From contig CAJFCJ010000014.1 in the NCBI GenBank assembly GCA_904063045.1, positions 1,671,643 to 1,735,642 of the forward strand: a DNA stretch of 64,000 nt, written 5' to 3'. Source of the DNA: Dimorphilus gyrociliatus (Eukaryota > Animalia > Annelida). Below are positions 1 through 45,031 of the stretch, piece after piece. The notes under the pieces are model-generated. The model worked only from the letters and a program-made list of their open reading frames with translations, made no database searches and was not told the origin of the DNA. The stretch's first letter is position 1, and every line of letters begins with the position of its first letter. Made by a program: the position numbers and the translations under genes.

Positions 1-336
1 ATCGCTTACGTAATTAACATCAAAGCTGAATAAATGGGCCGAACTTTACTTTAAACATACATACGTTGTTATTTTGTTAACTTTGTGTCTTAAACATTGT
101 ACTATACAGGAAAATGTATATTTACTTTACATTATACCTGTAGTATTAATAATAATTTAGATAAGCGACAATTAACGACAGTAGATAGCAATTCGCTTTA
201 GTAAGATATTTAGATCATGTGGCCTTATTCTCCCAGAGTTTTTCATACCATTATGAAACATTATTCGATCGATTACAATTTAAATTGATCGAATTTCCTA
301 AAATACAATATTTTCATTAATGATATATTTTCGCAG

Positions 337-465
337 GGCTTGTCCGTTATGACTGATACCATACCGAAGAAAAGTAGAAAAGAGAGGATGGAAGCAGAAA
401 TGGCACAGTTAGAGAAAGATATTGAACTAATGGAAAAACATCCAGTAATCTTTATTGCTAATTAA
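337..465 (+). CDS. ENKUR: Enkurin, terminal coding exon (gene starts upstream of the window)
   Basis: Acceptor ttttcgcag|337. Translation GLSVMTDTIPKKSRKERMEAEMAQLEKDIELMEKHPVIFIAN* matches the enkurin C-terminus as recalled (GLSVFIDSIPKKIRKQRLEEEMKQLEHDIGIIEKHKIIYIAN). Confidence 0.85.
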   Translation, partial: GLSVMTDTIPKKSRKERMEAEMAQLEKDIELMEKHPVIFIAN

Positions 466-1610
466 ATTATATCTAATTATAATAATTAATTATTTGGATT
501 TCTTTATTTATTTTACTTTATCTGACAAATACAGTATATAAATAGAAAAGTATATTTTACGAAATCCTTCTTTATTTGACCAATTAAAAAGCTTTAGAAG
601 AAAGTTACGTACTGGAATGATATTTACACGTCTCATTCTTATATAAGGAATTTTTTAAACCTTTGACTTTATCATATTAGTAATAGTTTAAATATATATA
701 TCAAAGGTTAACGAAAGGTAAATTTTCCTACCATGTGAAATTTAGTATTACCCTTTAGAACTTTTTGCTGTCTACTTTGCAATGAAAGTTTTAGATTTAT
801 GTCAAACTAAGCCTATAAACATTCGGCTAGCGAAACCAAAAATCTGAGGCCAAGTTATATAAATATTAGAACCAACGCTCTTACGAATTGCGCTCTTCAA
901 TTTGTTAGAGTTACTATGAATCACTGAGTTAATTGTATACTATCCGCGAAAATATCACCTAAAATGAAACAGAAATGAGAGATAGATAGGGAGAGACTAA
1001 CAGACAGGCAAAAAAAAGTCATGTTGACCGTTACCCTTTCTCTCGCTATCTATTTGTCTATCTATCTATCTATCTCTCTTCCTACTGTTCCATCATTTTT
1101 ATATTTTTACTGTATTCTATAAGAGAACAAGTCACAATTAATATACTTAGAGGGTGTCAGCCAATAATTCAATAGCAGCATCATTAGCATTCCTAAATAA
1201 GCGACTGATTAATAAATCTAAAGTTATAATTGATAAAATGTTAAATAAACATTCTTCGAATCGCAAATATACAGTCAATTGTATACTATATAATCACTAT
1301 ATATATACAGTATATATATATATATAGCCTCAAAATTTATGCAAAACATTCGTATTGTATTGAAAACTATGGACAGAAAGTTAAAGTTAGATTCTAGTTA
1401 AAAATGTTTGCTTCCTGATTTTTCGTTTTTTTTTGATAGCTCTACAATATAAAACTAAATGAAATATTAATACTTAAAAGGCGAGAACAAATTACCTAAT
1501 ACTAAATACTAACTGTAACAAAACTATGACAAATTCATAGCAGATGCGCGAAAACAAAAGGAAATATTTTGAATGATTAAAGAGTGTTTTTTTTTTTTAC
1601 TACTAAAAGA

Positions 1611-1760
1611 TTAATCTTTCGTACCTAAAATTCGTTTGTAGAGTGACTGAAATAGAAATTGGACACGTTTGCCACCTCCTTTCGGTTTTGAGGATTCTGA
1701 AGCGGTTTCTGACTGTTTATCAATCGACAATAAACTTTGACAAACCGCTCCAGCTAATTG
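1611..1760 (-). CDS. Candidate stop-codon readthrough extension of the innexin (49 codons after the UAG)
   Basis: After TAG (1763-1761) the frame stays open: QLAGAVCQSLLSIDKQSETASESSKPKGGGKRVQFLFQSLYKRILGTKD, then TAA at 1613-1611. Context is TAG CAA TTA. GC is 39% here versus about 24% in the next 170 nt (hand count). Confidence 0.7.
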   Translation of the reverse strand, partial: QLAGAVCQSLLSIDKQSETASESSKPKGGGKRVQFLFQSLYKRILGTKD

Positions 1761-1763
1761 CTA
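1697..1763 (-). promoter_or_regulatory. Readthrough signal: UAG-CAA-UUA plus a 3' stem-loop
   Basis: Minus-strand CUGGAGCGGUUU (1753-1742) pairs with AAACCGCUUCAG (1708-1697): 12 bp with one GU. Inner stem GUUUAUUG (1735-1728) pairs with UGAUAAAC (1722-1715). The stem starts 7 nt after the stop. Confidence 0.65.
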
Positions 1764-3255
1764 GCTGGTATCTTCTTGCGGTACTGTCACTTTTCTTTTT
1801 ACGAGGTCTTGATCTGTGCTCGATTCTCCATCGTAATATTCTTTTCTAGCTACATCTTCAGGAATATCAGCAGCGGGATCTTCTCTTAGAGTATCTCCTT
1901 TCAAGCTCAAAGCATCAGCTTCATAGCTTTCAAACCTAAAAATAGAGTTTCTAGTTCTTGTGTACATATCCCATAGACCAGCTATTAATTCGGCAGATAT
2001 CATATCACTTGTGTTTTTGGCGACCATTCGAACTATAAAGCAGCCATCTCTTCTCAAGTAATGATTTGTAAAATGCTTTAAACTTTCTGGGCTGGCTGCT
2101 TTTCCGTGATATTTGTCAATGGCTATCAGGCGCCTGAAGTAAGTTTATCAAAAGCTGAATTAATAAAGCGATTTATTTAATGAACAATGTATTTACCTTT
2201 TTATATACGATTCATGGTCTTTCATGCAGAAGCATTTAATAATCACGTAAAATAGACTTCCTGCCGTTGCAGAACTAAGGAAAACAAACCAAAACCATAT
2301 AACTATGAAGATCTTCTCATTGAATAGATTTATCGGTAAAGTACATTGAACCAAATATGACTGAACATTGCCAACGACTCTTATGTTAAAATCGCACATT
2401 GTAACTCTTGGAAATCTTTCCGATAAATTCCATGGTTCTTTGTTGATTATTTGTTTTAACACCTTAATACCATACATGTTATAGTCTGTTCCAAGGAAGA
2501 CATTCAATAGAAACAGTTGACCAATGGCATTACCTAGATAGACGACTTTAAAAAATAAATATAACACAGTTAAGTAATTTCCATAAAACTTCCAACAGAA
2601 ACTTCGACATGTTGTTGTCATGTGTTTTCTTGAAACCTCTTTTAGAAATCTACTAATATGATTTACCATATATTTCAATGTTTTTTCTCTATTTTCAGGA
2701 TCTCGCTGTCGTTGACAATCAATAGCAGCATCTGTAACAGTTGCCACAGAAATTCCAGAGTGCCTATTAAGAACTCTCCACAAAGGTCTGGGAATATAAA
2801 AAAACATGGCCATTGCGCAAAGTATTAAGGCTACCCATTGATAATATCCTATTCTCTTCACATTTTCATAATTAGCTAAAAAATGAGATAAAGAAAAAAA
2901 GAAGCAAAAATTAGTACAGTGTATTTAAAGTTCTTATCTAATGATTAATAAATTATGAAGATCAGGTTGATAGGAATGTAAACAAACCTGGAATTTCTGT
3001 ATCTTCTTGCACAGGCAAATAGAAGGTATTAGTTGTCCAGCATACCTTATTGGTATAATCTATGTGGCTTGACGTAAAGTGAGCAGGACACCAACAACTA
3101 ATCGGTTCTCCGACATAATGATTCGTAGTGATGATAATAGAAAAGATTACTAATAGAAATGTGGTGTACCTATTACTCAACCTATCCGTAAAGCTGTCGC
3201 CCCCACCAATTCGAGCGTCACTTAAATCGGCAAAAACTGAAAGTAGTCTATCCAT
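1761..3255 (-). CDS. Innexin (gap-junction protein), 3 exons, 439 aa
   Basis: complement(join(1761..2133,2197..2875,2988..3255)) = 1320 nt, GT-AG introns of 112 and 63 nt. Family motifs: DSFTDRLSNRYT, PISCWCP, CW, YYQWV, FPRVTMCDF, QCTLPINLFNEKIF, YLRRDG. Confidence 0.97.
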
Positions 3256-4020
3256 TCAGTCCTAATCAACATCCATGCACAAAAACACAGGCCTTAATTG
3301 GTTACATACAAACAAGTATTATCAGCGTAATTTTTCGTAAAGATATAATAATTTAAGGCTAGTATTCCTGAGCTAGCAAAGAGTCCCTGCATAAAACGAT
3401 ATTATAACTTCCACAATCGATATTTTTGCACACTATTATCAGATAAGGCACGATCATTGAAAAGTAAAGGCCAAACGTTACTTATTTAAGTCAGAAAAAG
3501 CGTTTAAACGTAAAAATGTTAATGTTGGAATTCCAAGACTGATCGATAATAGAAGGAAAAACAGATGGCGTTACTGTTTCACCTCTCCCCACTTATATTT
3601 GCTCAATGCATTCAACAAGAATTATGTGTATAGGCCGTATAAGTTTTTATACGATATGAATGAAAACATTTGTAATTTATTTATATTTATTTGAAATAAG
3701 TAGATTATTCAAATGAATAAATTAGAATATTTAATAGTAATTATTATATTAATTAAAAGAATATACATACTATACATATTAATGTATAGTAAGTATATTG
3801 AAGTGTTTATTACTTATTAACGCATATTGTAGTGATAACAGAACAAATAATCTAATTTGTTAAATATTTCAACAAGCTGTCCTTTATTTTTAATTATGTA
3901 ATCTCAAAAAAAAGATGAAAAGATTTGTTTCAGATAACAGCTGTAATTATTACGTCATAGTTAATTAAGATTTAAATAAATCAGATTTTTGTTGTTTTTG
4001 TTTATAAAATAATTTTAAAG

Positions 4021-32423: not shown

Positions 32424-35400
32424 ATGGCTTCGCACGACACAGAATGGTTGTCTGTCGAACTAGGAAATTATTATGATATAGGCAAGGATATACAAGATAT
32501 AGTGTTTCATCCAACTCTAAATACAATCTTAGTCATAAATTCTGATTCCACTGTTCAAGTTTTGGACGCGGGTTCTGGCTTAAAATTAGCAGAATCAGAT
32601 TTGAATGGTAAGTTGTGCAATATCAAGAAAGAATCCATAATTAAAGATTCTTTATGAACCTAATACAATAAATTTGAACAGCAAACACCGAGAATGCTCT
32701 TAGATGCGCCTATTTACCAAAATCTGACCGGCTGGTCTTTACGAATGGAAATAAATTGTCTTGTCGATCTGATTTCAACGGAATCATCCTTCTACCGTCC
32801 TCTTTGCAGTCAGGAGTTTGTAGTCTAGATGAGACGATAAAACTAGAATTGCCACTTCCAGAGGTAAGAAAGCATATTTTTGATTAAAGAAGTTAGTAAA
32901 TAAACTAACTTTCTACCTCCAAATAGGCGTACCATCTATATAAAGCATTATGTGTTGGGGACCTGGAGAATGTAGAACACTGTAAAGAAATAACGAATTG
33001 TTTACAAGAAGCAGTAGTTAAAGCACGAACAGAGAGTTCCAACAAAAACCATAAAATAGCAAAGGTTTGACGCGAATATTTCTTTAATTATAGTTGCTAA
33101 AGTTTAAATGTTTTTATTCTGACTTAGTGGGCGGTCGTGTGCATGGAAGCACCTATAGGAAAATTAAAAACAGTTTGCTCTCAACTTGTAGAAGAGTTAA
33201 AAAGAGATCGTAGCAAACATAATTTACCTGGTCTACCTGTAGCATCTTCAGTTGTTTATAGACTGCAAAATCTTTTTGAAAATTCAACGACAGCAGATAC
33301 TCGTTCACTAATGTGCAGTGAAGAAGCCCGTAGAAATACCTTTACTTCTTGGCCGCATATGACATATAAATGGGCTCTTCCCGAAGCTATGGCAGAAGCC
33401 GGATTTTATCATCAACCTAACTCCACCGGTGAAGATAGAGCCCTATGTTTTACGTGTAACGTTTGTTTAGTGTATTGGGAGCCATGCGACGAACCATGGT
33501 CAGAACATGAAAGGCATTCTCCAAACTGCCCTTTCGTCAAGGGTGAATATACGAACAATGTCCCACTATCTGTTTCGAATGCAACAGAACGAGCAATGTC
33601 TAGCGGGGAAGAAGAGGTATTTAATTACACCATATTTAAACCTTAAATCATATGACACCACAATCATAATATTTTTTTTAGATCACTGTAATTGGTTGCT
33701 CCTTAGGAACTGATTGTTTTGCAACTGGAACAAGCAAGGGAAATATAACTCTGTGGGATAATTCAATTAATTTAAAGGTTGGTAATTTATCCGATAGCAT
33801 CTATATTATTTATTTTATTCAATTATTTGCAGAAATATCTAGAATTTGCTGTTAATCCTTGTGATCCCTTAATATTATTTGAATTAGAAGAGCTATCTTC
33901 CAGGAAACAATCTGATTACAGCCGTCCATTAACTGACATCAATTTAACAGCATTATGCGTTCTAAGGTCTAAACATAATCCTCAAGAAAGTTGCAGCGTA
34001 ATAGGTGGAGTTACGGTCAATTTAAACAAATTACCAACAAACGAAGTCGAAGATTTAAATTCCGTCAATAAAGCCATTACGGCAGAAAATATCATAAATG
34101 ATGAACCTAGTGTTCAAAAAGAGTCCTTGAGCTTACTCTTGGTTTGGAGTGTCACAGACAGTACTAGTCTTGCCCTGCATAAGAAAAATGGAAAAACAAT
34201 GAAAAATTCAGAATCAGTAAAACCCCCACTACCACCTGCACCTGAAGGAGGTTGGGAAGACGATAACTACTTTGAGCATGTGCCTGATAGTCCAATGAAA
34301 TTGATGCAAGACGTCTTTCTCACCGGACCATCGTTGACTGACAGCGAAAATCTGCCTTTCTTACCGCAAAATCCTCTTCACATGGAAGAACCTAATGATA
34401 CCTATGTTAATTCTGAAAAGGGCAATCCCTCAGCTGAGTTAATTCAATGTGTAAGAGTTAATGGGGAAATGACAAATGTGCTATCAACTATTGATGGAAA
34501 TTTTATCATAGTAGCTGTCAAGGGGGAACAAACTTCGAAAGTATTTGTTTATAGTATTCTTCAAATGGGAATTAACTCAAAAGCTTGTTGTGAAAGAGAC
34601 ATTGATGGAATTATCAAAAATTTGTGCTTATTACGACAACAGGCTATTTTCAGCCAAGATACTGATTCCGTAGATGAGGAAACAGAGAGTGACCCACAGG
34701 AAGATGAAAATCCTCCGGAGCGAAAAACTGCCTGTGGAATGATGGCTGTCACTTTAGTTTGCGGTGACTTATTAATTCTAGACCTGTCAAACCTAAATAC
34801 TCTTGCAAGAATTCGAGACGCTAAATTTGTATCGACAACATATTGTTCGTCCTTAGATAAACTATGCGCTACCACAACTGACGGTAAATTAAATATGTAT
34901 TCACTCGTAATGAAAAAAGCTCGCAGATCAGCGAAACATTCATCGTCAGAATTAGAGAATGGTGATTTACGATTAGAAGATGATGAGAGAACTACCACTA
35001 CAATTGATATCAATCCCACTACTCTGAAGAGTTTACATAGTCTTCTTCAAATGCAAACTTTAAAATGTCATATAACTGCTCCCCAATGTTGGACAGAGAT
35101 ACAAAACGAATCCAGAAGAAATATGATTCAACAACAAACTCACACATTTTCTAGAACTTGGCGCTTAGAACAAGATTCGTATAGTTGGGATGAACATTTG
35201 TTTGATATATCTTTGCATAAGCCGAGCTCTGTTGCTCATGTTGATTTAACTTTGAAACTTCGAAATTCTTCGAATCATCATTCAACAGTTCAAGTTACTC
35301 TTCTTAAGCAATTTTCCGTCTCTTCCACTTTACAACGAAAAAGCAATCACAAAGCTCCAGTTGCTGGTCGTTCCATTGCCAACCCTGTAAAAGATAATGA

Positions 35401-38400
35401 GTTTTTGGCAGAACATAACGCTCAAATCCTTGTCGGCCCAATAGAACTATCTCAACATGTAGATGCGAATGGTAAATTTGCCTATATAACTCTTTCTAGT
35501 CCTGAATTGACAACGTCAAAAAGCAGAAATCTTTTGTTGCATTTTAAATGTACCTACATACCTTGTAACGCTCTATCTGAAAAGACTCTATTAAAAAGAA
35601 GAAAATCGAACGAATATCTCTTGTCATCAGCAAGTTCAAAAAATGATGTTAATGCTTTTGGTTGTGATATAATTAGTGAAATTGCAATTTCGGTCAGGAA
35701 ATATAAGAAGCTGGATGTGAAAGAGAAATCAGAACGATCATTGATGCTACGTAATAGGTGCTTCCTGGAAAAACTCGTACAATATATGTGTGAAAACGAC
35801 TGCAGTCGTTTAGAGCGAGAAAAATTGTTATGTTTGGACATCTTACAATGGAATGCTGGATTGCATTTTTATTCGAAGCTGGAGAACAGTGTTGTTTTGG
35901 ATGTGATTGTTGATAAAATCGATATTATTCTAAGGTCTTGTTTATTAAATGGATCACGATTGGAATCAGATAGAGTTTGCAAATTGTTAGTCCTCTGCTT
36001 TGATAAACAACGTTGCAAACGACATGAACCGCGCCTCTTAAAAGCTATATTGACTATGTTATCATCAATAGAGACTATTGTTTCGGCCAATGCTCTCTAT
36101 TCCGTATTCCTATTATTGGACCAAGTTAAAATGGCTGATGTTGCAACGGCTGGTGAACAATGTATTCAAGTATTAAACAGAATAGCTAAATTATACACTG
36201 AAAGAGATAGTGAAATGTATGCTCTTTTAAGATCTAAATTTGACCTGTATGGAAGACCTTTTGATCCCCTGATATTTCATTTTCAATTGAACCAATCGAA
36301 AGTTTGGAGTAAAAGTGTTCCTGTTACCTATTCATCTGCTGTAAGCCAAACCACCTCTTCAACCGCTGCAAATATAACTAACAGCACAGCAGAATCAGGA
36401 GAAAAAGCTCAACAAGTTTATGACTGGCACTCAGAATTTCAGGGATATTCAAGCTATGATAAAAAGAAAAGAGTTTTTTCGCCCTTTGGATTGTTGGAAG
36501 TTGAACCATTGCATTTAACTACCCACTCAGCCAGTGAAGGCATGAGAATGGAGGGAGCTGACTATACGCCCAGTGTTGCCCCTGATCCTGTAGTAAGCGG
36601 TTGGACTAGTTACGGCACCAAAGGCGGAGCTGAATCAAAACTGCCACTAGCTGGTATTTTTGTCTCTCATTCAAAACATTTATTATCAAGTATGCCTGCT
36701 ACACCGAAAACTACCCCTCAAACTGTTACGCCACAGGGTATGACACCATCTGCCTCACCTCCAGATAATTTTCAGTATCTGTCAGGTGCTCATTCTCCTT
36801 TTATTTCCAAAGGAGCTCAATCTAAAAGTGACCAGAATCAGACATCTATTCCTTCACCAGCAATCGGAGGAACATTAACACTACCACCAGCTCAATTACT
36901 ACTTGTTGATGGTATGCACTCAGGAGCAAGAAGATACATTACTCTGGACGCAGGAAGAAGTATTATGCTAACTGATATAGTAATTCCAACTTTACCAACA
37001 AATGTAGCCAGTTTGGCTATTGATGTTTGGGATGAAAGTGAAGAAAGTAATTCACAAAGAATATTGTTTAGCACTGACGTTTCACAAAGACCAGTCCATC
37101 TTTCATGCTTATCTCCCCCTCCAATATGTCGATACATAAAGTTGACAGCCACTGGTGGACACGGATGCTGTACCACTCGAACTGTTCTACCTTTGGGACA
37201 TTTCTTCGGATATTCGATAATTGAAAATGAAACTGTTGCTATGCACAGGCTCAATTCTTTAGTGTCTCATTACGAAGATGTTCACTGCAAGTATAGCTTA
37301 GCCTGTCACAAATTATCGTCAAATTTGCATTCCTTGTCTGGCATTGATGAGTCTGAAAAAGATAAAAAAGCAGTAAAAATATTGAAAGATTCTTATTATA
37401 CTTGTCTTCAGCTACAACTGCAATTGAGTTTCATCCATAGATCTATGAATCGATTTCGTAGATTGCTGGGCCAAAACTGTGAAGAAGAAGAAATACCCAC
37501 TGATAAGCTAATGGTTATCTCAGAATGTTTGTTGTCTACTTTACTGTGCTTGACCGTTTGTTCTTCGGGTACAGCTGATACAAATGCTATTGGAAATGCA
37601 CTAACCCCCAGTGTTTGCCATAATCTGTTACAATCTCTCTGTGTTAAAGGAACTCCGAAAATGCAAGTTTTAACGGGAATTTTCCTCGTAAGGGTTCACG
37701 GAACTCAAAGTTGGTGGGGTACTTTTGTGGGAAACAGTATATGCGACTTGTTCGCGTATCCCAATTGTAATTTTATACCCAAACAGAGATTACTTTCATT
37801 ATTTACAATTCTTGGACATAAAACAATATGCAGTGCTTCAAAAGCAAGAAATTATTTGGAAAGTCTTCTTACTTTATTATCTAGATTCCTAATGCCTCTC
37901 CTTGAAGTCTTGGCCCAGAATGGAACTGACGAAGACATTGCATTAGCAACCAGCAAATTAGATCTAGAACTGCTTACATGGATTCTTTTATTTTTATCCA
38001 AGAATTTAGAAGTAGTATCAAGTCAGAATGAAGAAAAAACAAATATGAGATCTCGTTGGTGCTTTCTTCAAAGCGATGTAAAAGCAGGACACGACAGTGC
38101 TTCAGGTGGGCCTTATAGTAGTTCTCAATGCGAAAAACTCTATAAAAGAAAATTACATAAGAGATTGCTGCACCATAAGCAACAATTATTGGAATTGCAG
38201 TCGGTCAAGTTGAACAAATTACAAAACTTAGCTGCAAATGCTATAGAGGCTCAGCAAATAAGCAAAGAAGCGGAAAAACTTGCGAAAAAAGAGCAGCAAA
38301 TAATTAGTAAAACATTAAAGCAATACGAATCCAAAACTTTCAAAGACGCCCTATTAGCCCGTCGTAAATTGGATGAACAGATGAGGAAGCGATTTCCCCC

Positions 38401-41400
38401 TGAATCTCGCTCCCATGCCTCTCATATGGCTATAAATTTGAGTTCTGTTGTTGATATTGAAAAAGAAAAATGTATACCTGTTGTTAAAGGTCTAGTCGGG
38501 CTACTTTTGACTATTGATGTATCTTCAAACGTTCATTTGTTGCTTGTTCTCTGCAAATTAATTGCCAAGATATCTCATTTGCCGAAACCAAGTATTAACT
38601 TATCAGAAGCTTTAACACCATCGCAATTGAAAAACCTTATGCTGTTACAATCAGAATGCGATAGCAAACATCTTTCGGGGCCATGGACATCTCATGCTGT
38701 TAACTCATTACTATATGATTTGGTACAACAGCAGAGTGATTCGTCTTCGCCAATTAACTTTACAGGAGAAGCCGCCATTCCAGGAGTTTCCGGTGCTTCA
38801 GGGAGCAACAACAGTAATAATGCTACTGCAAGCACAAGTTCAGGTGCTTGTGGTGGAGCGACGGCCAGTGCTATCTCCAATGTCAATTCAAGTTCTAACC
38901 TTAATGCAAGTGGAAGCGGCTTATCATCTTTTGCATCGTCTTCTAGTAAAGTTGAACAAATGGATTTATCTTTTTCTGATGAAGATTTGCCTATAGCGGA
39001 ACAAAGTAGCGACAAGGACGGAAACCCTGATTCCTCAAGTGACGATACCGTCATGAATAATCTTCCTGATTTAAGTATTGTTGGAGCTCCAATTACGATT
39101 ATTTCTGATCCTCAAGTTGAGCACATGAATGAACCAAATAATATTTTTCAATCATCAGTCCTTGATGTTTTGCTAAATGATCATATCAAGAAATCATCAA
39201 ATTTGTCGAAACATTCTAATAGTAGTAATAATAGCAACAACAGCGAATCGACGAATATTTCAATGGCCATCGACTCTAGAACTCAAGTTGGATTACAAAT
39301 TTTAGCAGATTTGAAAATAAGAATGACCGCTTCAAACCTGCAGGATAGCTTACATTCATCTTTCGTATCAACTTTACCATTATCTAGTAATTATGGTCAT
39401 TCATTGCATAGTTGTTTGAAACCATCTGTTGAAGATGAGAGGAGACAGACAGAAATAGTCCGTATTCTAAATATGAAATCATCAACAAATGAAGAATTGA
39501 TATATACAGCTTTAGACGACCTTGTATATTTATTTAAAGAAGGAAAGTTAAATATAGATACTCTTTTGAACATGTGGTCCTCGCTTGCAAGCATTTTGAA
39601 TTCTCCTATACTACGAAAGAACATGCCGGTTGTCATCTTGATGCGAATTGCTGATAATTTGCTTACAATACTCTCTTCCCAACATTTCCTAAATGTTACC
39701 ACTAGCGTTCTGGCTTTAAACATATTAAGTAAGTTATGCGTATCCGAAATCGTTGCAACAAATTTGTCATCCAAGGACGAGATATTTCGCTTGCTAAAGT
39801 CTTTATTAACGGACATGAACACTGAATTAGCAGGTCCGGGAGTTTGCACCGCTTTATCTAAATTTTTAGCTGATTTACAAAAAGGAAAACTCTGCTTGGA
39901 AATCATGTTCAAGTTGGCTACAGATATATGTCAGGTATGGCCCAGAGGTCCAATCGATTTACAGCATTCCTTCCTGACTTTCCTCTCTAAGATTGTGACT
40001 GGAAAAAACAGCAAAATATCTCAAAACTTGGCTTTGCAATACGTTCAATGCGTATCTACCTTGATTTCAATTGGAATAAATACTGGTAATGTCAGCTGTC
40101 AGACAAGTATTGATTCCAATAGAACGTCCTGTCTAGAAAGCATCTTTCAAGAAGATCAGAAAGAAGAGAAAATATTTGTCAATAGACCAACTCTCTTGGC
40201 ATTAGTAATTAGAATATGTGCCCATCTCGTCCCTTATGTAATCAACAATATAGAAATGAATGTTCAATATAAATTTTTATCAGCTTTGAACGACTGCTCG
40301 TCTAATACACTGGCTATGCTGATGTGCGCAGCTGGTAGACCACCTCCTCAAATTATAAATCGAACTCCAAGCAATGCTTATGATGAAATGTTTTCTTTTC
40401 TTCTCAGTATTCACAAACAAGAGACAGGTCGAGAAGTCGGTATTCAAGCTATAGCCAAAATACTGGCAGATGCAACTAAATTATCTCAAGCTGTACTATG
40501 GTTATGTCTTACTGTTCTAGATGAAAAGAAAAAGCTAGCAATATTCTTACGTTTAGGAGGAGTTATTGCTGTATGCCGCCAACTTATTAATAGTTCAAAA
40601 TTTTCGTTGTGCTCTTGGCCTTTAGTCTTAACAGAAATGTTAGAGGAAGATCAACTTATGACTGGTCCTAGCACAAAGCTTAAGGAAGAAGAAGATGGTC
40701 TTAAAAATTTAGCACCTTTATGTCGCATCACCAGCTCAAGTAAAAACAATGCTGAGGCTCTTCTCTTATCAAACCCACCACATAGGAGAGCCAGATCTGC
40801 CACTTGGACTTATCACTTTTCACCTGGTGAAGTGTGGGTAGATCTAACCCTTCACCTTCCATTCGCGGCTCTTCTTTACCAAGTAAATATTGTGCCACAT
40901 GCTATTTCTTTATCAACAAGCCCTTATTTAGTCGCTTTGGAAACCGCAATGGATAGCAATAATGTCTTACCACTGTGTGAACCACTTCATACTGCAGGAA
41001 TGTCAACAATTAAACTTAAATTAGATTCTCCAACAGTAGTAACATCTGTCACTATACGATTACATAGACCACTTGATAACTCATCAATTGGCTTATCTCA
41101 AGTGCTCCTTCTTGGAACACCAGCCTTCTTGAAGATAAAAAGTGATATTACTGATGGTAGCAACAGAAAATCAGGTGCAGCTTGGTTGAAACTCTTACAT
41201 CATTGTTTAATTTCTTCATCTGAACTTAGTAACGACGTAATATCTTGCGTACAAGCATTTTCTACAGAAAATAGAAATTTTGTTCAGAGTTGCACTGCAT
41301 TGACTTTAAATAATTCCTGCGGCATTTACGGCGATGCTTTGGAAGAAGTTCTCGTGAAACTGGGAAGTTGCGAGGAAAGTTTAAGCAAAAGAGTTCTGGA

Positions 41401-44400
41401 ATGCATCCTAAATTTCACAGAATCGACAGAAATGAGCGTTGAAATATTTAAGAAACTTGCTGCTCGAGTTGATCAGTTTATGAGCGATCGATTAACTTAT
41501 ATTTTGGAATGGCTATCAAAAACAGCGGCAAACGTTGTTCATAATAGAGTAAAACCACCGGCGAATGGACATGTACAGGCCATTGGAAATGTCTTATGGA
41601 ACGTTGCGGACCAAGTAGATCGTTTCTCCGGGCTCCTGAATATAAATTTATTACAATCTTTATTTGAATGGGCTATGAAAACACACGACAGCTCAACCCG
41701 TTGTGCAATTGAAAGTGTTATCTGTTCAATTTGTATGTTGATACCTAGCCTTTTAAAACCATTAACTGAAAATTTATACAACATCGATCAACAAGCTCTA
41801 TCAATCCTTGCTTCTGCCTGTTCGTCTAAACGAGCAGTGGTTGCAATGTTGGAGGGAAACTTTTTACTAAGCTTAGTTCAAAAAGTTAGAGCGACTTTTG
41901 ATTCATCAAGCCAATTTGATTCTTTCCCCTCTCATTTACATGCTCCAGTTTTAAAATTTTTGGCTCGGGTGTCAACAGTATCCCATTTTCAAGATTTTCT
42001 TGGCAGTTTAGGGCAAGAATTTTGGAATGGGCTACTATTATCGGTCTGCACATGGAAGCACATGTCCGACTACGTATATAGGGAGAGCGTTCATACAGCC
42101 TGTATTGAATTAGTTCGAGCCGTTACTCTTTGCCATCGGGAGAATCAAAAACTTATAGCATCGTGCCTTTGTCATGTTTTACAAACGTCCCCGTCCGTTT
42201 CCGCCTTTCTCAGAAGAATTCTCCTTCAAGTATTATTGGAGTATGAAAAAATAACCATCAACATCCACGGAAATGTTCCTCTAACAAGTTCTCTCGGTTA
42301 TCCTGGATTACCGGCACACCCTAGGCACGCGCTTGGCTTAAAAGGACGTTGCTTATCAGCTGCAGTAAATTGCAAATTAGCCCAATTAATATCAGTGGAT
42401 ACATCGTCATCTGAAGTTGACGATGAATTTTCCCAAAATTCCGATGATCGGGAAGACGATCGAAGAAGAACGATTAACTATTTCTCATCTGTGCATGTGA
42501 CATCAGCTTGTAAAAGAGTAAAGAAGGCATCAAAGAACGATAGTAATTCAAAGCAGCAAGCTCTCAAAAAAGCCTTTAAATCTCCTATCGTGCTATATTT
42601 TACCCATTCGGCTCTTGGGGATTCAGTGAAAATTTCACCTCAAATGAAAGTGGGAACCTTGTTAGAACTTTTGAAAAACCACAAAAGAGATGAAAACGTG
42701 CTTGACTTAATGGCTCATGATGCAAAAGAAGGGACAGATTGTAAAGAAACACTAATTGAGTCTTGTGATAAGCTAGGCTCATCATCTATTCTACATGCAT
42801 TTGCGGATTCTGGTGGCTTGGCTCTTTTGGCAGATAGACTACCATTGCTACATTCTGTTGCTCAAACAGCATCTGCAGCTCAGCCAATGATTTCATCCTC
42901 CAGACCTAACATGGACGATTGGATTACTCTCGAAAGTGGCGATGATTTCTACGATGATTTGAATTTCATATCACAGACAATGCAGATAAATAATGTAGAA
43001 ACCACTCAAAAAACATCAAAGAGTGCAGCACAGGCTGCAAATGCGTCAGCTTTCCAACCAGCTCCCCCTCATTCACTTTTAATATTCGGTTTGTGTCTAC
43101 GGCTTCCGAAATATGCGGATGTGTTACTAAGAAGTAATAAAGAAAAAGCTGTCAGTCTCTTGAGATTGGCTTTGGGTGTTGCTGATGACGCGGCAGGCGT
43201 TCCCATAATAGGATCTGAAGCAGCCCAAGGTTTGGCTATTTTACCAATGGTCGTTCTCAATGATCTTTTGGAGTCTACCGAGGAAGATGGAATGAAGCTT
43301 CGACATAACATTGCAGATTTAGGAATTTTGCATGTTCTTTTGGCTGTTCTCGCAATTCTCAGCCATCAGAATCCCTTCGAACCCTCTATAAGCCATCCCC
43401 ACTCTCATCTGATAAATGTTGCAACACAATCGGCAAAAATGCTAACTACTACAACTAATAATAAAAAAGTTTCAGCATCCGAGACAGCAAAAAAGACAAC
43501 CGTGGGTACTGCTCAAGGTACTGCTGCGGGACAACAATACTGGGCCAAGGGAACAGGATTTGGAACAGGAAGCACAGCCAGCTCTTGGGATGCAGAGCAA
43601 GCTCTATTAAGGCAAAAAGCAGAAGAGGATCACGTGTCAGCTTTATTTCATGCCATTTCCTCATTCTTCAATAACAATGACTTGAGAAAAGATCGAAATT
43701 TTACTAATGATCTCTTCGAGTTGTTTAATTCCTCATGTTTAGTTTCTGCTTCTTGCTCTTATTTGAGAAACGACTCAGTTTTGGACATGTCCAGGCATGT
43801 TCCGCTGTATAAGGCGTTACTTCGATTGCTTCGATCAATCAGTTCAGTTCCAACCCTCGTACCTTTACTAACAACATCAACGTCAACATCAGATGCAAGT
43901 CTAAACTCTCTACTTACAAGTATGAAAAATTGTGTCGATACTTATTCATCTCGCTTGGCAACCAAAGTAACGGCTGGTATAGCAGAAGAAAAAGGAGAAT
44001 TATCTCAACTGATTCCAGACATTCAGAGAACAGCTAAAACTGTTGAAAGTGCCACCGAAGTTTTACAAAAAGATATTCAAATGACAGATGTCACAGATAG
44101 ACTGAATTGTGTTTCTGAAGAGCAAAGCTTAGAGGAAACTTATATGCAAACTATGAAAAGTCTGCAATTTGACACCTATAACATGGTTGTAACAGAAAGA
44201 ACTGGTCCACCAAAATTTGTCGTCAGTCACCATTACGCTAATAGCGTTAAAGTCGCAGGAGAGCCAACTGGCCAGAATGCCGCCTCGCGAGCGAGGCGGT
44301 TAGCTCAGGAAGCAGTCACTTTGTCAACTTCACTCCCACTTTCGGCATCCAGTTCAGTCTTTGTCAGATGCGATGAAGAAAGGTTGGATGTTATGAAAGT

Positions 44401-45031
44401 ATTAATAACAGGTCCTGATGGAACACCATATGCTAATGGATGCTTTGAATTTGATGTTTACTTCCCTTTGGATTACCCAACTGCTCCGCCTCATGTTCAT
44501 CTATGTACTACGGGAAACAGAAGCGTTCGATTCAATCCTAACTTATATAATGATGGAAAGGTTTGCTTATCTGTATTGAATACATGGCATGGAAGACCAG
44601 AAGAAAAATGGAACGCATCTACTTCAAGCCTACTTCAAGTTTTAGTCTCAATACAATCGCTAATTTTGGTTGCCGAACCATATTTTAATGAGCCTGGTTA
44701 CGAAAGATCTAAAGGTACTGTAAGTGGAGAGGCCAGTAGCCGAGAATATGACAGTAATATCCGTCAGGCAACAGTTAGGTGGGCAATGTTAGATATGCTG
44801 CAAAGACCACCAGCAGCATTCCGAAGCGTCATTAAAAAACATTTTTGGTTGAAGAGAAATCAGATAACCAAACAATTGGATGATTGGCTAAATGAGACAC
44901 AAGGGCTTTCCAACGATAGAAGAAGCACAAGAGCAATAGCTCATAGTCTAGCATCATTAAAAGTTCATGCAGCGCAAGTTAAAGAAGAACTACGAAACAT
45001 GAAATGCCCGGACGATGATGGTTCGGTATAA
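32424..45031 (+). CDS. BIRC6: Baculoviral IAP repeat-containing protein 6 (Bruce/Apollon), BIR + UBC, 6 exons, 4095 aa
   Basis: join(32424..32607,32682..32863,32927..33064,33128..33616,33682..33777,33833..45031) = 12288 nt. BIR domain: EEARRNTFTSWPH..AGFY..DRALCFTCNVCL..WE..DEPWSEHERHSPNCPF. C-terminal UBC: GPDGTPYANGCFEFD..NPNLYNDGKVCLSVLNTW. Confidence 0.98.

What the first reader, a model, noticed from the sequence alone, without database searches (positions are those of the whole stretch)
1611..1763. Innexin with a candidate programmed stop-codon readthrough isoform (UAG-CAA-UUA, +50 aa)
Seen: the innexin stop reads AGC TAG CAA TTA GCT, and the same frame stays open for 49 more codons to TAA at 1611. 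GC drops from 39% to about 24% right after that second stop. No other gene in the window has a leaky context combined with such an extension. Established: UAG-CAR-YYA is the tobacco mosaic virus readthrough signal and is also leaky in yeast and animal cells; readthrough-extended channel isoforms exist (e.g. AQP4ex). Inference: this gap-junction subunit is made as 439-aa and 489-aa forms, which could give mixed hemichannels with different tails. I am not aware of innexin readthrough being described in this lineage.
Basis: partly seen in the sequence, partly recalled or inferred. Interest (0 to 1): 0.93.

Follow-up and report, generated by a model that had tools for sequence, protein, structure and literature searches.

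The report
Conserved leaky stop extends an annelid innexin
A gap-junction (innexin) gene of the tiny marine worm Dimorphilus gyrociliatus ends at a stop codon in a classic "leaky" context, and a related species keeps the same stop, the same context, an RNA stem and a protein-like 47-49 codon continuation, so some ribosomes very probably read through the stop and make a longer channel subunit.

Summary
The window is Dimorphilus gyrociliatus (GCA_904063045.1). The minus-strand innexin has three exons and encodes 439 aa. It ends AGC-TAG-CAA-TTA at 1763-1761, followed by 49 open codons and TAA at 1613-1611. GC falls from 39.5% to about 25% after that TAA.

A spliced transcript contig confirms both introns. 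It runs unspliced through the TAG, and RNA contigs continue past the second stop. The TAG is present in both RNA and DNA contigs.

The decisive evidence is a syntenic ortholog from a related, unnamed species (L005). Synonymous sites between the two are saturated.
- It keeps AGC-TAG-CAA-TTA at the same position, followed by 47 open codons.
- The extension is 49% identical in amino acids. Changes are biased to third positions (19/13/30), with pN 0.33 against pS 0.80 (Fisher p 1.5e-6).
- The only gap inside the extension is 6 nt.
- Alignability ends at the second stop.
- A 10-bp stem starting at +13 is conserved, with two compensatory changes.
- The candidate splice sites that could remove the TAG are not conserved.

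The best reading is programmed stop-codon readthrough giving 439-aa and 489-aa isoforms (about 0.78). There is no direct evidence of translation, and only two species are available. This is a new member of a known kind. The scan's other notes on this stretch are re-readings of the same DNA.

The parts
2988..3255 (-). Innexin exon 1 (ATG at 3255; donor CAG|GTTTGT)
   Evidence: Pfam PF00876 positions 1-64, E 2.7e-22. The intron 2987-2876 is skipped in RNA contigs of X3, X1 and X2.
2197..2875 (-). Innexin exon 2 (core of the channel domain)
   Evidence: Pfam PF00876 E 7.8e-62. X3 contig record 9 joins 2875|2988 and 2132|2196.
1764..2133 (-). Innexin exon 3: end of the innexin domain plus the cytoplasmic C-terminal tail, up to the last sense codon AGC
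   Evidence: Pfam PF00876 positions 290-332. The assembled CDS is 439 codons. The annotated protein DgyrCDS10047 ends at the same TAG.
1761..1763 (-). UAG, the candidate leaky stop
   Evidence: Present in the genome, in the X3 RNA contig and in the X4 DNA contig. A TAG sits at the homologous position in the ortholog, L005:2340-2342.
1755..1760 (-). CAA UUA, the tobacco-mosaic-virus-type readthrough context
   Evidence: Identical in D. gyrociliatus and L005, although synonymous sites elsewhere in the extension differ at about 80%. PMC9272376 describes it as the most effective suppression motif.
1614..1760 (-). 49-codon in-frame extension
   Evidence: The frame is open. Codon usage is coding-like. 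Against L005: tblastn E 1.3e-9 and 49% amino-acid identity. pN/pS is 0.41, Fisher p 1.5e-6. It is the only frame of six that is open in both species.
1611..1613 (-). TAA, the second stop; conservation and the GC plateau end here
   Evidence: L005 also has TAA (2484-2486), followed by the same TC and an A-run.
1742..1751 (-). 5' arm of the conserved 10-bp stem (GGAGCGGUUU); its first base is +13 counting U of UAG as +1
   Evidence: RNAalifold on the two species gives 10 pairs with none broken and U-A changed to C-G at one pair. A further compensatory pair lies just inside. The D. gyrociliatus 81-nt fold has z -4.63.
1699..1708 (-). 3' arm of the conserved stem (AAACCGCUUC)
1656..1670 (-). K-R-V-Q-F in the extension; K-K-V-K-F in the ortholog. 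It fits a PP1-docking RVxF pattern. The role is inferred only.
   Evidence: The motif assignment rests on general knowledge and was not tested.
1629..1640 (-). Y-K-R-I in the extension; Y-R-K-I in the ortholog. It fits a YxxPhi sorting pattern. The role is inferred only.
   Evidence: The motif assignment rests on general knowledge and was not tested.

Best explanation
This is programmed translational readthrough of the innexin UAG. Most ribosomes terminate at UAG (1763-1761) and make the 439-aa subunit. A fraction decode the UAG with a near-cognate tRNA, because the codon is followed by CAA-UUA and then, after a 9-nt spacer, by a stable stem that would sit at the ribosome's mRNA entry channel. 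Those ribosomes continue for 49 codons to UAA (1613-1611) and make a 489-aa subunit with a longer cytoplasmic C-terminal tail.

Shown: the gene model; an mRNA that carries the whole extension unspliced; conservation of the stop, the context, the stem and the frame; and purifying selection on the extension's amino-acid sequence.

Inferred: that readthrough is how the extension gets translated, how efficient it is, and what the tail does. A reasonable guess is that the tail adds short docking or sorting motifs (K[RK]VxF and Y[KR][KR]I, both conserved) that alter trafficking or phospho-regulation of the channel.
For: (1) The window is Dimorphilus gyrociliatus: L001 is identical to window 3255-1761.
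(2) X3 contig record 9 (1643 nt, depth 586) skips exactly the two introns and runs continuously from 2132 to 1645 across the TAG. Further RNA contigs cover 1587-1674, 1569-1723 (X1) and 1336-1598. The transcript therefore contains the TAG, the extension and the second stop.
(3) The ortholog L005 has the same neighbours (Enkurin on the opposite strand, then a Ubiquitin_2/CAP-Gly gene). It reads AGC TAG CAA TTA at the same place, followed by 47 open codons and TAA.
(4) The substitution pattern is that of coding sequence. Differences by codon position are 19/13/30, pS is 0.80, pN is 0.33, and Fisher p is 1.5e-6. That is as constrained as the canonical tail just upstream, where pN/pS is 0.52.
(5) A free nucleotide alignment gives 57% identity in the tail and 56% in stop plus extension, with one 6-nt gap. 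Identity is 39-48% after the second stop. The remaining roughly 1.1 kb is unalignable apart from one 41-nt block.
(6) Only the sense frame 0 is open in both species. The antisense ORF seen in D. gyrociliatus is closed in L005.
(7) The 10-bp stem at +13 is conserved, with two compensatory U-A to C-G changes, three of the four changed bases at synonymous third positions, and no broken pair. The other four third-position sites in the arms are unchanged, against about 80% synonymous difference across the extension.
(8) The literature describes CAA UUA as the most effective suppression motif (PMC9272376). [quoted passage not shown]
Against: There is no ribosome footprint, peptide or reporter evidence that the UAG is ever read through. 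Only two species could be compared, and the second is unnamed and has no RNA data. Logan contigs drop rare variants, so a minor spliced or edited isoform cannot be excluded. The L005 hairpin region alone is not significantly more stable than shuffles (z -1.52). With two sequences, the covariation evidence amounts to two events. The extension has no detectable homolog in 1.84 billion representative proteins. More distant innexins and the 50% paralog lack both the context and the extension, so the feature is lineage-restricted. The codon alignment was guided by the protein alignment, which slightly favours synonymous matches, although the free nucleotide alignment gives the same register.
Confidence: 0.78

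Rival explanations
1. Alternative splicing: a minor isoform removes the TAG by joining an upstream in-frame donor to an acceptor at or after the TAG. The extension, or part of it, would then be ordinary coding sequence of an alternative 3' end.
For: D. gyrociliatus has in-frame GT...AG combinations. Examples are CTC|GTAAAA (1802) joined to TAG|CAA (a 42-nt intron) or to TTTCAG|TCACTC (1647, a 156-nt intron). Contig data cannot exclude rare isoforms.
Against: The dominant RNA contig is continuous from 2132 to 1645, and no joint is reported there. In L005 the GTAAAA and GTAGCT donors and the TTTCAG acceptor are absent at the aligned positions. The only GT near the first donor is out of frame. 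The sequence before the TAG is purine-rich in both species, which makes it a poor 3' splice site. The 1647 acceptor would leave 38 of the 49 conserved codons unexplained.
Confidence: 0.07
2. RNA editing: A-to-I editing turns UAG into UIG, read as Trp, in some transcripts, as at the hepatitis delta amber/W site. The conserved local pairing would serve as the editing substrate.
For: UAG is the triplet ADAR prefers (general knowledge). In D. gyrociliatus the UA of the stop lies in a perfect 7-bp hairpin, CCAGCUA/UAGCUGG, next to a longer stem.
Against: No G variant at 1762 reaches the 10% threshold in RNA contigs at depth 586. The 7-bp hairpin shrinks to 4 conserved pairs in L005, because a synonymous GCU to GCA change breaks it. 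That is far shorter than typical ADAR substrates. The conserved CAA-UUA has no role in this model.
Confidence: 0.05
3. The extension is not translated. It is a conserved structured 3'UTR element (regulatory RNA or protein-binding site), and the open frame and leaky context are coincidental.
For: The stem arms are constrained at the RNA level. There is no direct translation evidence. A 49-codon open run alone has about a 3% chance.
Against: RNA-level constraint does not predict the third-position bias (19/13/30), pN well below pS (p 1.5e-6), an in-frame 6-nt indel, a frame kept open independently in two species despite 44% nucleotide divergence, or coding-like codon usage. Between the stem arms the sequence differs freely, but in a codon-respecting way.
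Confidence: 0.07
4. The TAG is a recent nonsense mutation or an assembly error, and the extension is a decaying remnant of a formerly longer ORF.
For: Before the ortholog was found, coding-like composition after a stop was equally compatible with a recent truncation.
Against: The TAG is present in independent RNA (2017) and DNA (2020) data sets. It sits at the homologous position in a species so diverged that synonymous sites are saturated. The extension is still under purifying selection.
Confidence: 0.02

Closest known systems
Tobacco mosaic virus replicase readthrough (type I signal, UAG-CAA-UUA)
   Same: The stop codon and the six following nucleotides are identical. The 0-frame continuation produces a C-terminally extended product.
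   Different: This is a cellular animal gene, not a plant virus. It also has a conserved downstream stem, which TMV is not listed as having (table in PMC13517186). The extension is short (49 aa), not an enzyme domain.
Viral readthrough sites with a 3' stimulatory structure (MoMLV gag-pol pseudoknot, Colorado tick fever virus, alphaviruses)
   Same: A stable structure begins about 8-9 nt after the stop. Here it starts at +13, against +12 or +13 in those viruses.
   Different: The conserved part here is a simple 10-bp stem closing a variable interior. No pseudoknot was tested. No Rfam family matches.
Conserved cellular readthrough genes found by comparative genomics in Drosophila and Anopheles (Jungreis et al.; PMC5100048) and in mammals (for example AQP4, from general knowledge)
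   Same: The evolutionary signature is the same: a conserved stop, coding-type conservation up to the second stop, and enrichment of RNA structures within 100 nt 3' of the stop. That paper also notes more TAG stops among Drosophila candidates with structures. As with AQP4, the target is a membrane channel whose cytoplasmic tail is lengthened.
   Different: Insect and mammalian cases mostly use UGA-C or UGA-CUAG, whereas this one uses the TMV-type UAG hexamer. The lineage is Annelida (Dinophilidae), where the library shows only one earlier proposal, the Platynereis EFLGa precursor. No innexin case was found.
Innexin family (PF00876) gap-junction subunits
   Same: The full innexin domain spans the three exons. 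The closest relatives are annelid and other spiralian innexins.
   Different: The C-terminal tail is unusually long, and the readthrough extension is absent from more distant homologs and from the 50% paralog.

Membership tests
Programmed stop-codon readthrough (conserved cellular case) | An in-frame ORF continues from the annotated stop to a second stop | tested here: met
   49 codons in D. gyrociliatus and 47 in the ortholog.
Programmed stop-codon readthrough (conserved cellular case) | The first stop codon is itself conserved, not replaced by a sense codon, across species | tested here: met
   TAG sits at the homologous position in both species, although synonymous sites are saturated. Only two species were available.
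Programmed stop-codon readthrough (conserved cellular case) | A protein-coding substitution signature lies between the first and second stops and ends at the second stop | tested here: met
   pN 0.33 against pS 0.80, Fisher p 1.5e-6. The single indel is 6 nt. Identity falls from 56% to 39-48% after the second stop.
Programmed stop-codon readthrough (conserved cellular case) | A leaky stop context and/or a stimulatory 3' RNA structure | tested here: met
   UAG-CAA-UUA is conserved. A 10-bp stem at +13 has two compensatory changes. The context's effect is taken from the literature and was not measured in this organism.
Programmed stop-codon readthrough (conserved cellular case) | Splicing, editing, alternative initiation and antisense coding are excluded as explanations | tested here: inconclusive
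   The dominant transcript is unspliced and unedited at the 10% threshold. The candidate splice sites are not conserved. Neither extension contains a Met codon. The antisense frame is closed in L005. Rare isoforms cannot be excluded from contig data.
Programmed stop-codon readthrough (conserved cellular case) | Direct evidence that ribosomes translate past the stop (footprints, peptides or a reporter) | not testable with these tools
   No ribosome profiling or proteomics data were reachable. Read laying allowed one call, and it returned contigs only.
Innexin (Pfam PF00876) | A significant match to the innexin profile across the protein | tested here: met
   E 2.7e-22, 7.8e-62 and 3.1e-5 for exons 1-3, covering profile positions 1-332 of 333.
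A-to-I amber/W recoding | An edited adenosine in an extended double-stranded substrate, seen as G in cDNA | tested here: not met
   No G at 1762 at 10% or above in RNA contigs. Only 4 conserved base pairs surround the UAG. Low-level editing is not excluded.

The most novel reading that the evidence does not exclude
Dinophilid annelids use a composite recoding signal on a cellular gene: the TMV-type UAG-CAA-UUA hexamer plus a +13 stem. It produces a substantial fraction of a second innexin isoform. That isoform's extra cytoplasmic tail carries conserved PP1-docking (K[RK]VxF) and tyrosine-sorting (Y[KR][KR]I) motifs. The ratio of short to long subunits would then tune gap-junction trafficking, turnover or phospho-regulation. 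This would be the first recoded gap-junction protein and the first well-supported readthrough gene in Spiralia.
Probability: 0.3. Interest if true: 0.72.

Novelty: new member of a known kind. Interest (0 to 1): 0.58.

Why it matters
Conserved cellular readthrough is well documented in insects and in a handful of mammalian genes, but hardly at all in Spiralia. In the searchable literature no gap-junction protein, innexin or otherwise, is reported to be recoded.

This case is compact and easy to test: a 9-nt signal, a 10-bp stem and a 49-codon tail, in a laboratory annelid with a 74-Mb genome. It combines the plant-virus type I hexamer with a structure at the spacing used by animal viruses. That makes it a natural substrate for asking how context and structure cooperate on a eukaryotic ribosome.

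Biologically, it would mean that gap-junction channels in these worms can be built from two subunit forms that differ only in a cytoplasmic tail carrying candidate docking and sorting motifs.

It also shows that the public gene model needs correcting. The 322-aa model is missing 117 residues that the transcript supports, and the extended isoform should be annotated.

Tried and rejected
- **Extension peptide search.** A search of 1.84 billion representative proteins with the 49-aa extension gave no hit at E <= 1e-3.
- **C-terminal searches.** The word-indexed search with exon 3 found only one distant hit at 49% identity. The search with the last 66 aa of the tail had no candidates.
- **First ortholog contig.** L002 stops inside exon 3. 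The full locus was reached only through the second member of its 90% cluster.
- **A third species.** L002, L006 and L007 are 100% identical to L005, so they are one organism. The cluster of the L005 C-terminal ORF has no other members. A scan of metagenome contigs for the conserved 27-nt signal found nothing. A protein-guided scan confirmed no relative.
- **More distant innexins.** L008, L009 and the paralog L003/L004 have unrelated stop contexts and no extension.
- **Naming the second species.** Searching papers for its run accessions gave nothing.
- **Known RNA families.** Rfam at E <= 1 and a tRNA search on 1-3400 found nothing.
- **Explanations rejected.** Chance ORF, recent nonsense mutation, assembly error, antisense gene, and polyadenylation upstream of 1611; the reasons are given under the rival explanations.
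- **Minor X3 variant contig.** A variant contig over 1587-1674 carries two differences from the reference. One lies by graph geometry at 1644, the third position of a Ser codon. The letters were not shown and read laying could not be called again, so I draw no conclusion from it.

Full report
**Where we are.** The gene lies on the minus strand. L001, the NCBI record CAJFCJ010000014.1 of Dimorphilus gyrociliatus assembly GCA_904063045.1, is identical over its gene range to window 3255-1761. The organism is therefore the miniature annelid D. gyrociliatus, whose genome paper is PMC7854359.

Reading the sequence gives three exons: 3255-2988, 2875-2197 and 2133-1761. Together they encode 439 aa. 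All three exons match Pfam Innexin PF00876, covering the profile from position 1 to 332 of 333. The public protein DgyrCDS10047 (P0001, 322 aa) uses the same ATG and the same TAG. It lacks two internal pieces.

**The observation.** The stop reads AGC TAG CAA TTA GCT, with TAG at 1763-1761. The frame then stays open for 49 codons, to TAA at 1613-1611. GC is 39.5% in the extension and 25% and 23% in the next two 150-nt blocks.

An open run of this length is not rare on its own. In the window, 3.7% of stop-to-stop intervals are that long, and composition models give 1.5-3.3%. Codon usage adds weight. The extension scores +11.9 bits in frame 0, against -7.2 and +0.5 in the other two frames. Only 2% of other 49-79-codon open stretches in the window reach that score. 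Bona fide coding windows average 8.6. GC by codon position in the extension is 0.49/0.43/0.27, close to the 0.44/0.40/0.30 of long ORFs in the window.

**Transcript evidence.** Run X3 (2017, kind not recorded) behaves as cDNA.
- Its 1643-nt contig (record 9, depth 586) skips exactly 2987-2876 and the 63-nt second intron. It then runs without interruption from 2132 to 1645, straight through the TAG. This confirms the 439-aa model. It also shows that the dominant mRNA is neither spliced around the TAG nor different at the TAG.
- Further X3 contigs cover 1587-1674 (depth 445) and 1336-1598 (depth 136). An independent RNA run, X1, has a contig over 1569-1723. The mRNA therefore extends beyond the second stop.
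- The DNA contig of X4 agrees with the window throughout.
- X1 differs from the window at two sites in exon 2. Both are synonymous third positions, so X1 comes from a slightly different population.

Because these are assembled contigs, isoforms or edited forms below roughly 10% cannot be excluded.

**The ortholog.** The closest non-self protein, P0002 (74% identity), lies on a contig that ends inside exon 3. The second member of its 90% cluster, P0122, lies on an 8.4-kb contig, L005. That contig carries the innexin, then an Enkurin gene on the opposite strand, then a Ubiquitin_2/CAP-Gly gene. This is the same order as in D. gyrociliatus, so L005 is the syntenic ortholog from another organism. 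Its contigs from four runs are identical to one another. Coding identity to the window is about 73% at the nucleotide level. Synonymous sites are saturated, with pS between 0.62 and 0.94 in the different pieces. I could not name the species.

**What the ortholog shows.** Its innexin ends ...CCG CAA GAG GAC AGC TAG CAA TTA GCA GGA GCG GTC TGC.... The D. gyrociliatus gene ends ...CCG CAA GAA GAT ACC AGC TAG CAA TTA GCT GGA GCG GTT TGT.... The stop is TAG in both, at the same position, and the following hexamer is identical. The ortholog's frame then stays open for 47 codons, to TAA.

| Measure (extension, D. gyrociliatus vs L005) | Value |
|---|---|
| Amino-acid identity | 49% |
| tblastn E-value | 1.3e-9 |
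| Differences by codon position | 19 / 13 / 30 |
| pS | 0.80 |
| pN | 0.33 |
| Fisher p (synonymous vs nonsynonymous) | 1.5e-6 |

The canonical cytoplasmic tail just upstream is no better conserved: 46% identity and pN/pS 0.52.

An unconstrained nucleotide alignment gives 57% identity for the last 150 nt of the CDS and 56% for stop plus extension. The only gap inside the extension is 6 nt. Identity after the second stop is 39-48%. Apart from one 41-nt block, the remaining roughly 1.1 kb down to the convergent Enkurin gene does not align at all.

Of the six reading frames, only sense frame 0 is open in both species. The 68-aa antisense ORF of D. gyrociliatus has three stops in L005. Neither extension contains a Met codon, so independent initiation is unlikely. 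GC also drops in L005, from 43% in the extension to 22% after its second stop.

This is the classic comparative signature of functional readthrough: a conserved stop, coding-type conservation up to the next stop, and nothing after it. PMC5100048 describes the same properties for insect candidates.

**The RNA structure.** In D. gyrociliatus the 81 nt around the stop fold to -26 kcal/mol, with z -4.63. The fold has a 7-bp hairpin that includes the UA of the stop, followed by a longer stem-loop.

Comparison with L005 shows which parts are conserved.
- The small hairpin shrinks to four pairs, because a synonymous GCT to GCA change breaks it.
- A 10-bp stem is kept: GGAGCGGU(U/C)U paired with A(A/G)ACCGCUUC, at window 1751-1742 and 1708-1699.
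- No pair in that stem is broken. One pair changes from U-A to C-G, and a second compensatory U-A to C-G pair lies just inside.
- Three of the four changed bases are synonymous third positions (GTT to GTC, GAA to GAG, TGT to TGC); the fourth is the third position of a Ser-to-Pro codon change (TCA to CCG).
- The other four third-position sites within the arms are unchanged, in an extension where about 80% of synonymous sites differ.

The stem starts at +13, counting the U of UAG as +1, which leaves a 9-nt spacer. A recent review lists +12 or +13 as the start of the MoMLV, Colorado tick fever virus and alphavirus readthrough stimulators. [quoted passage not shown] PMC9272376 calls CAA UUA the most effective suppression motif and identifies it with the TMV context.

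The L005 region alone is not significantly more stable than shuffles (z -1.52). Two sequences give only two covariation events. The stem is therefore well supported as conserved, but its stimulatory role is inferred. No Rfam family matches.

**Alternatives.**
- *Splicing.* D. gyrociliatus has in-frame GT...AG pairs that could bypass the TAG. No such joint appears in the RNA contigs. The donors CTC|GTAAAA and GAT|GTAGCT and the acceptor TTTCAG|TCACTC are absent at the aligned positions in L005. The sequence before the TAG is purine-rich in both species.
- *A-to-I editing of UAG to UGG.* This is conceivable, because UAG is ADAR's preferred triplet (general knowledge). However, no G variant reaches the 10% threshold at depth 586, and only four base pairs around the stop are conserved.
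- *A recent nonsense mutation or an assembly error.* The ortholog and the independent RNA and DNA data sets exclude this.
- *A purely RNA-level function.* That would not explain the third-position bias, the in-frame indel or the open frame in both species.

**Mechanism proposed.** Most ribosomes terminate at the UAG. A fraction insert an amino acid through a near-cognate tRNA, helped by CAA-UUA in the +4 to +9 positions and by the +13 stem at the entry channel. Those ribosomes add 49 residues to the cytoplasmic C-terminus. That innexin C-termini are cytoplasmic is general knowledge of the family.

Residues conserved between the two extensions cluster in four places:
- at the start, QLAGAVC-SL-S;
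- at ETAS;
- at K[RK]V-F;
- at LY[KR][KR]I-G.

The last two fit the PP1-docking RVxF pattern and the YxxPhi sorting pattern. Another first-stage note suggested this (s1-084280). I can add only that both patterns are retained in the ortholog. Their function is untested.

**Distribution and novelty.** More distant innexins (L008, L009) and the 50% paralog in the ortholog's genome (L003/L004) have ordinary stop contexts and no extension. The extension peptide has no detectable relative among 1.84 billion representative proteins. The feature therefore appears restricted to this dinophilid lineage.

In the searchable literature I found no report of innexin readthrough. No innexin name appears in the supplementary tables of PMC5100048 as held. 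Readthrough has been proposed once in an annelid, for the Platynereis EFLGa precursor (cited in PMC5100048). That paper places abundant readthrough as arising after the divergence from centipede.

This is a new, well-supported member of a known kind of recoding, in a new gene family and an under-sampled phylum. It is not a new mechanism.

**Verdict.** Direct proof of translation is missing. Interest is moderate to high for recoding and gap-junction specialists.

Noticed in passing
window 1761-3255 (minus strand): The public gene model DgyrCDS10047 (322 aa) omits two internal segments, 117 residues in all, including transmembrane parts. The transcript contig X3 record 9 contains those segments. 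The RNA supports a three-exon, 439-aa protein.
   Followed up: yes
window 840-880; L005:3336-3376: A 41-nt block is 85% identical between the two species in the otherwise unalignable region between the convergent innexin and Enkurin genes. tblastx shows a shared NIYITWP peptide in one frame. Its nature is unknown; it could be a UTR element or a small ORF.
   Followed up: partly
window 900-1294: An X3 RNA contig of 1325 nt has higher depth (858) than the innexin CDS (586). It covers the intergenic stretch between the two convergent genes. It may be the Enkurin 3'UTR, overlapping 3'UTRs, or an unannotated transcript.
   Followed up: no
window 1586-1598: A genomic A12 run lies just after the second stop. 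Its length varies (a one-base insertion in X3 and X1 contigs), and RNA depth drops from about 445 to 136 there. This could be internal oligo-dT priming or a proximal poly(A) site. No AATAAA lies nearby.
   Followed up: no
window 33776-45028 (plus strand): A single open stretch of 3751 codons without interruption, presumably a giant single-exon gene.
   Followed up: no
runs X1 and X2: RNA libraries labelled 'invertebrate metagenome' and 'coral metagenome' contain correctly spliced fragments of this D. gyrociliatus innexin. X1 carries two synonymous differences. The worm, or a close strain, is probably present in those aquarium or field samples.
   Followed up: partly
L003:1367-2839 and L004:1091-2563: A 50%-identical paralogous innexin occurs in the same samples as the ortholog. 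It has a Glu/Lys-rich low-complexity tail, a TGA stop and no extension, and it lacks the first intron.
   Followed up: partly
window 1764-1784; L005 2319-2339: The last residues of the canonical ORF (V-P-Q-E-D-(T)-S) and their codons are much better conserved than the rest of the tail. The difference between species is an in-frame 3-nt indel just before AGC-TAG. The conserved block around the stop therefore extends upstream as well.
   Followed up: partly
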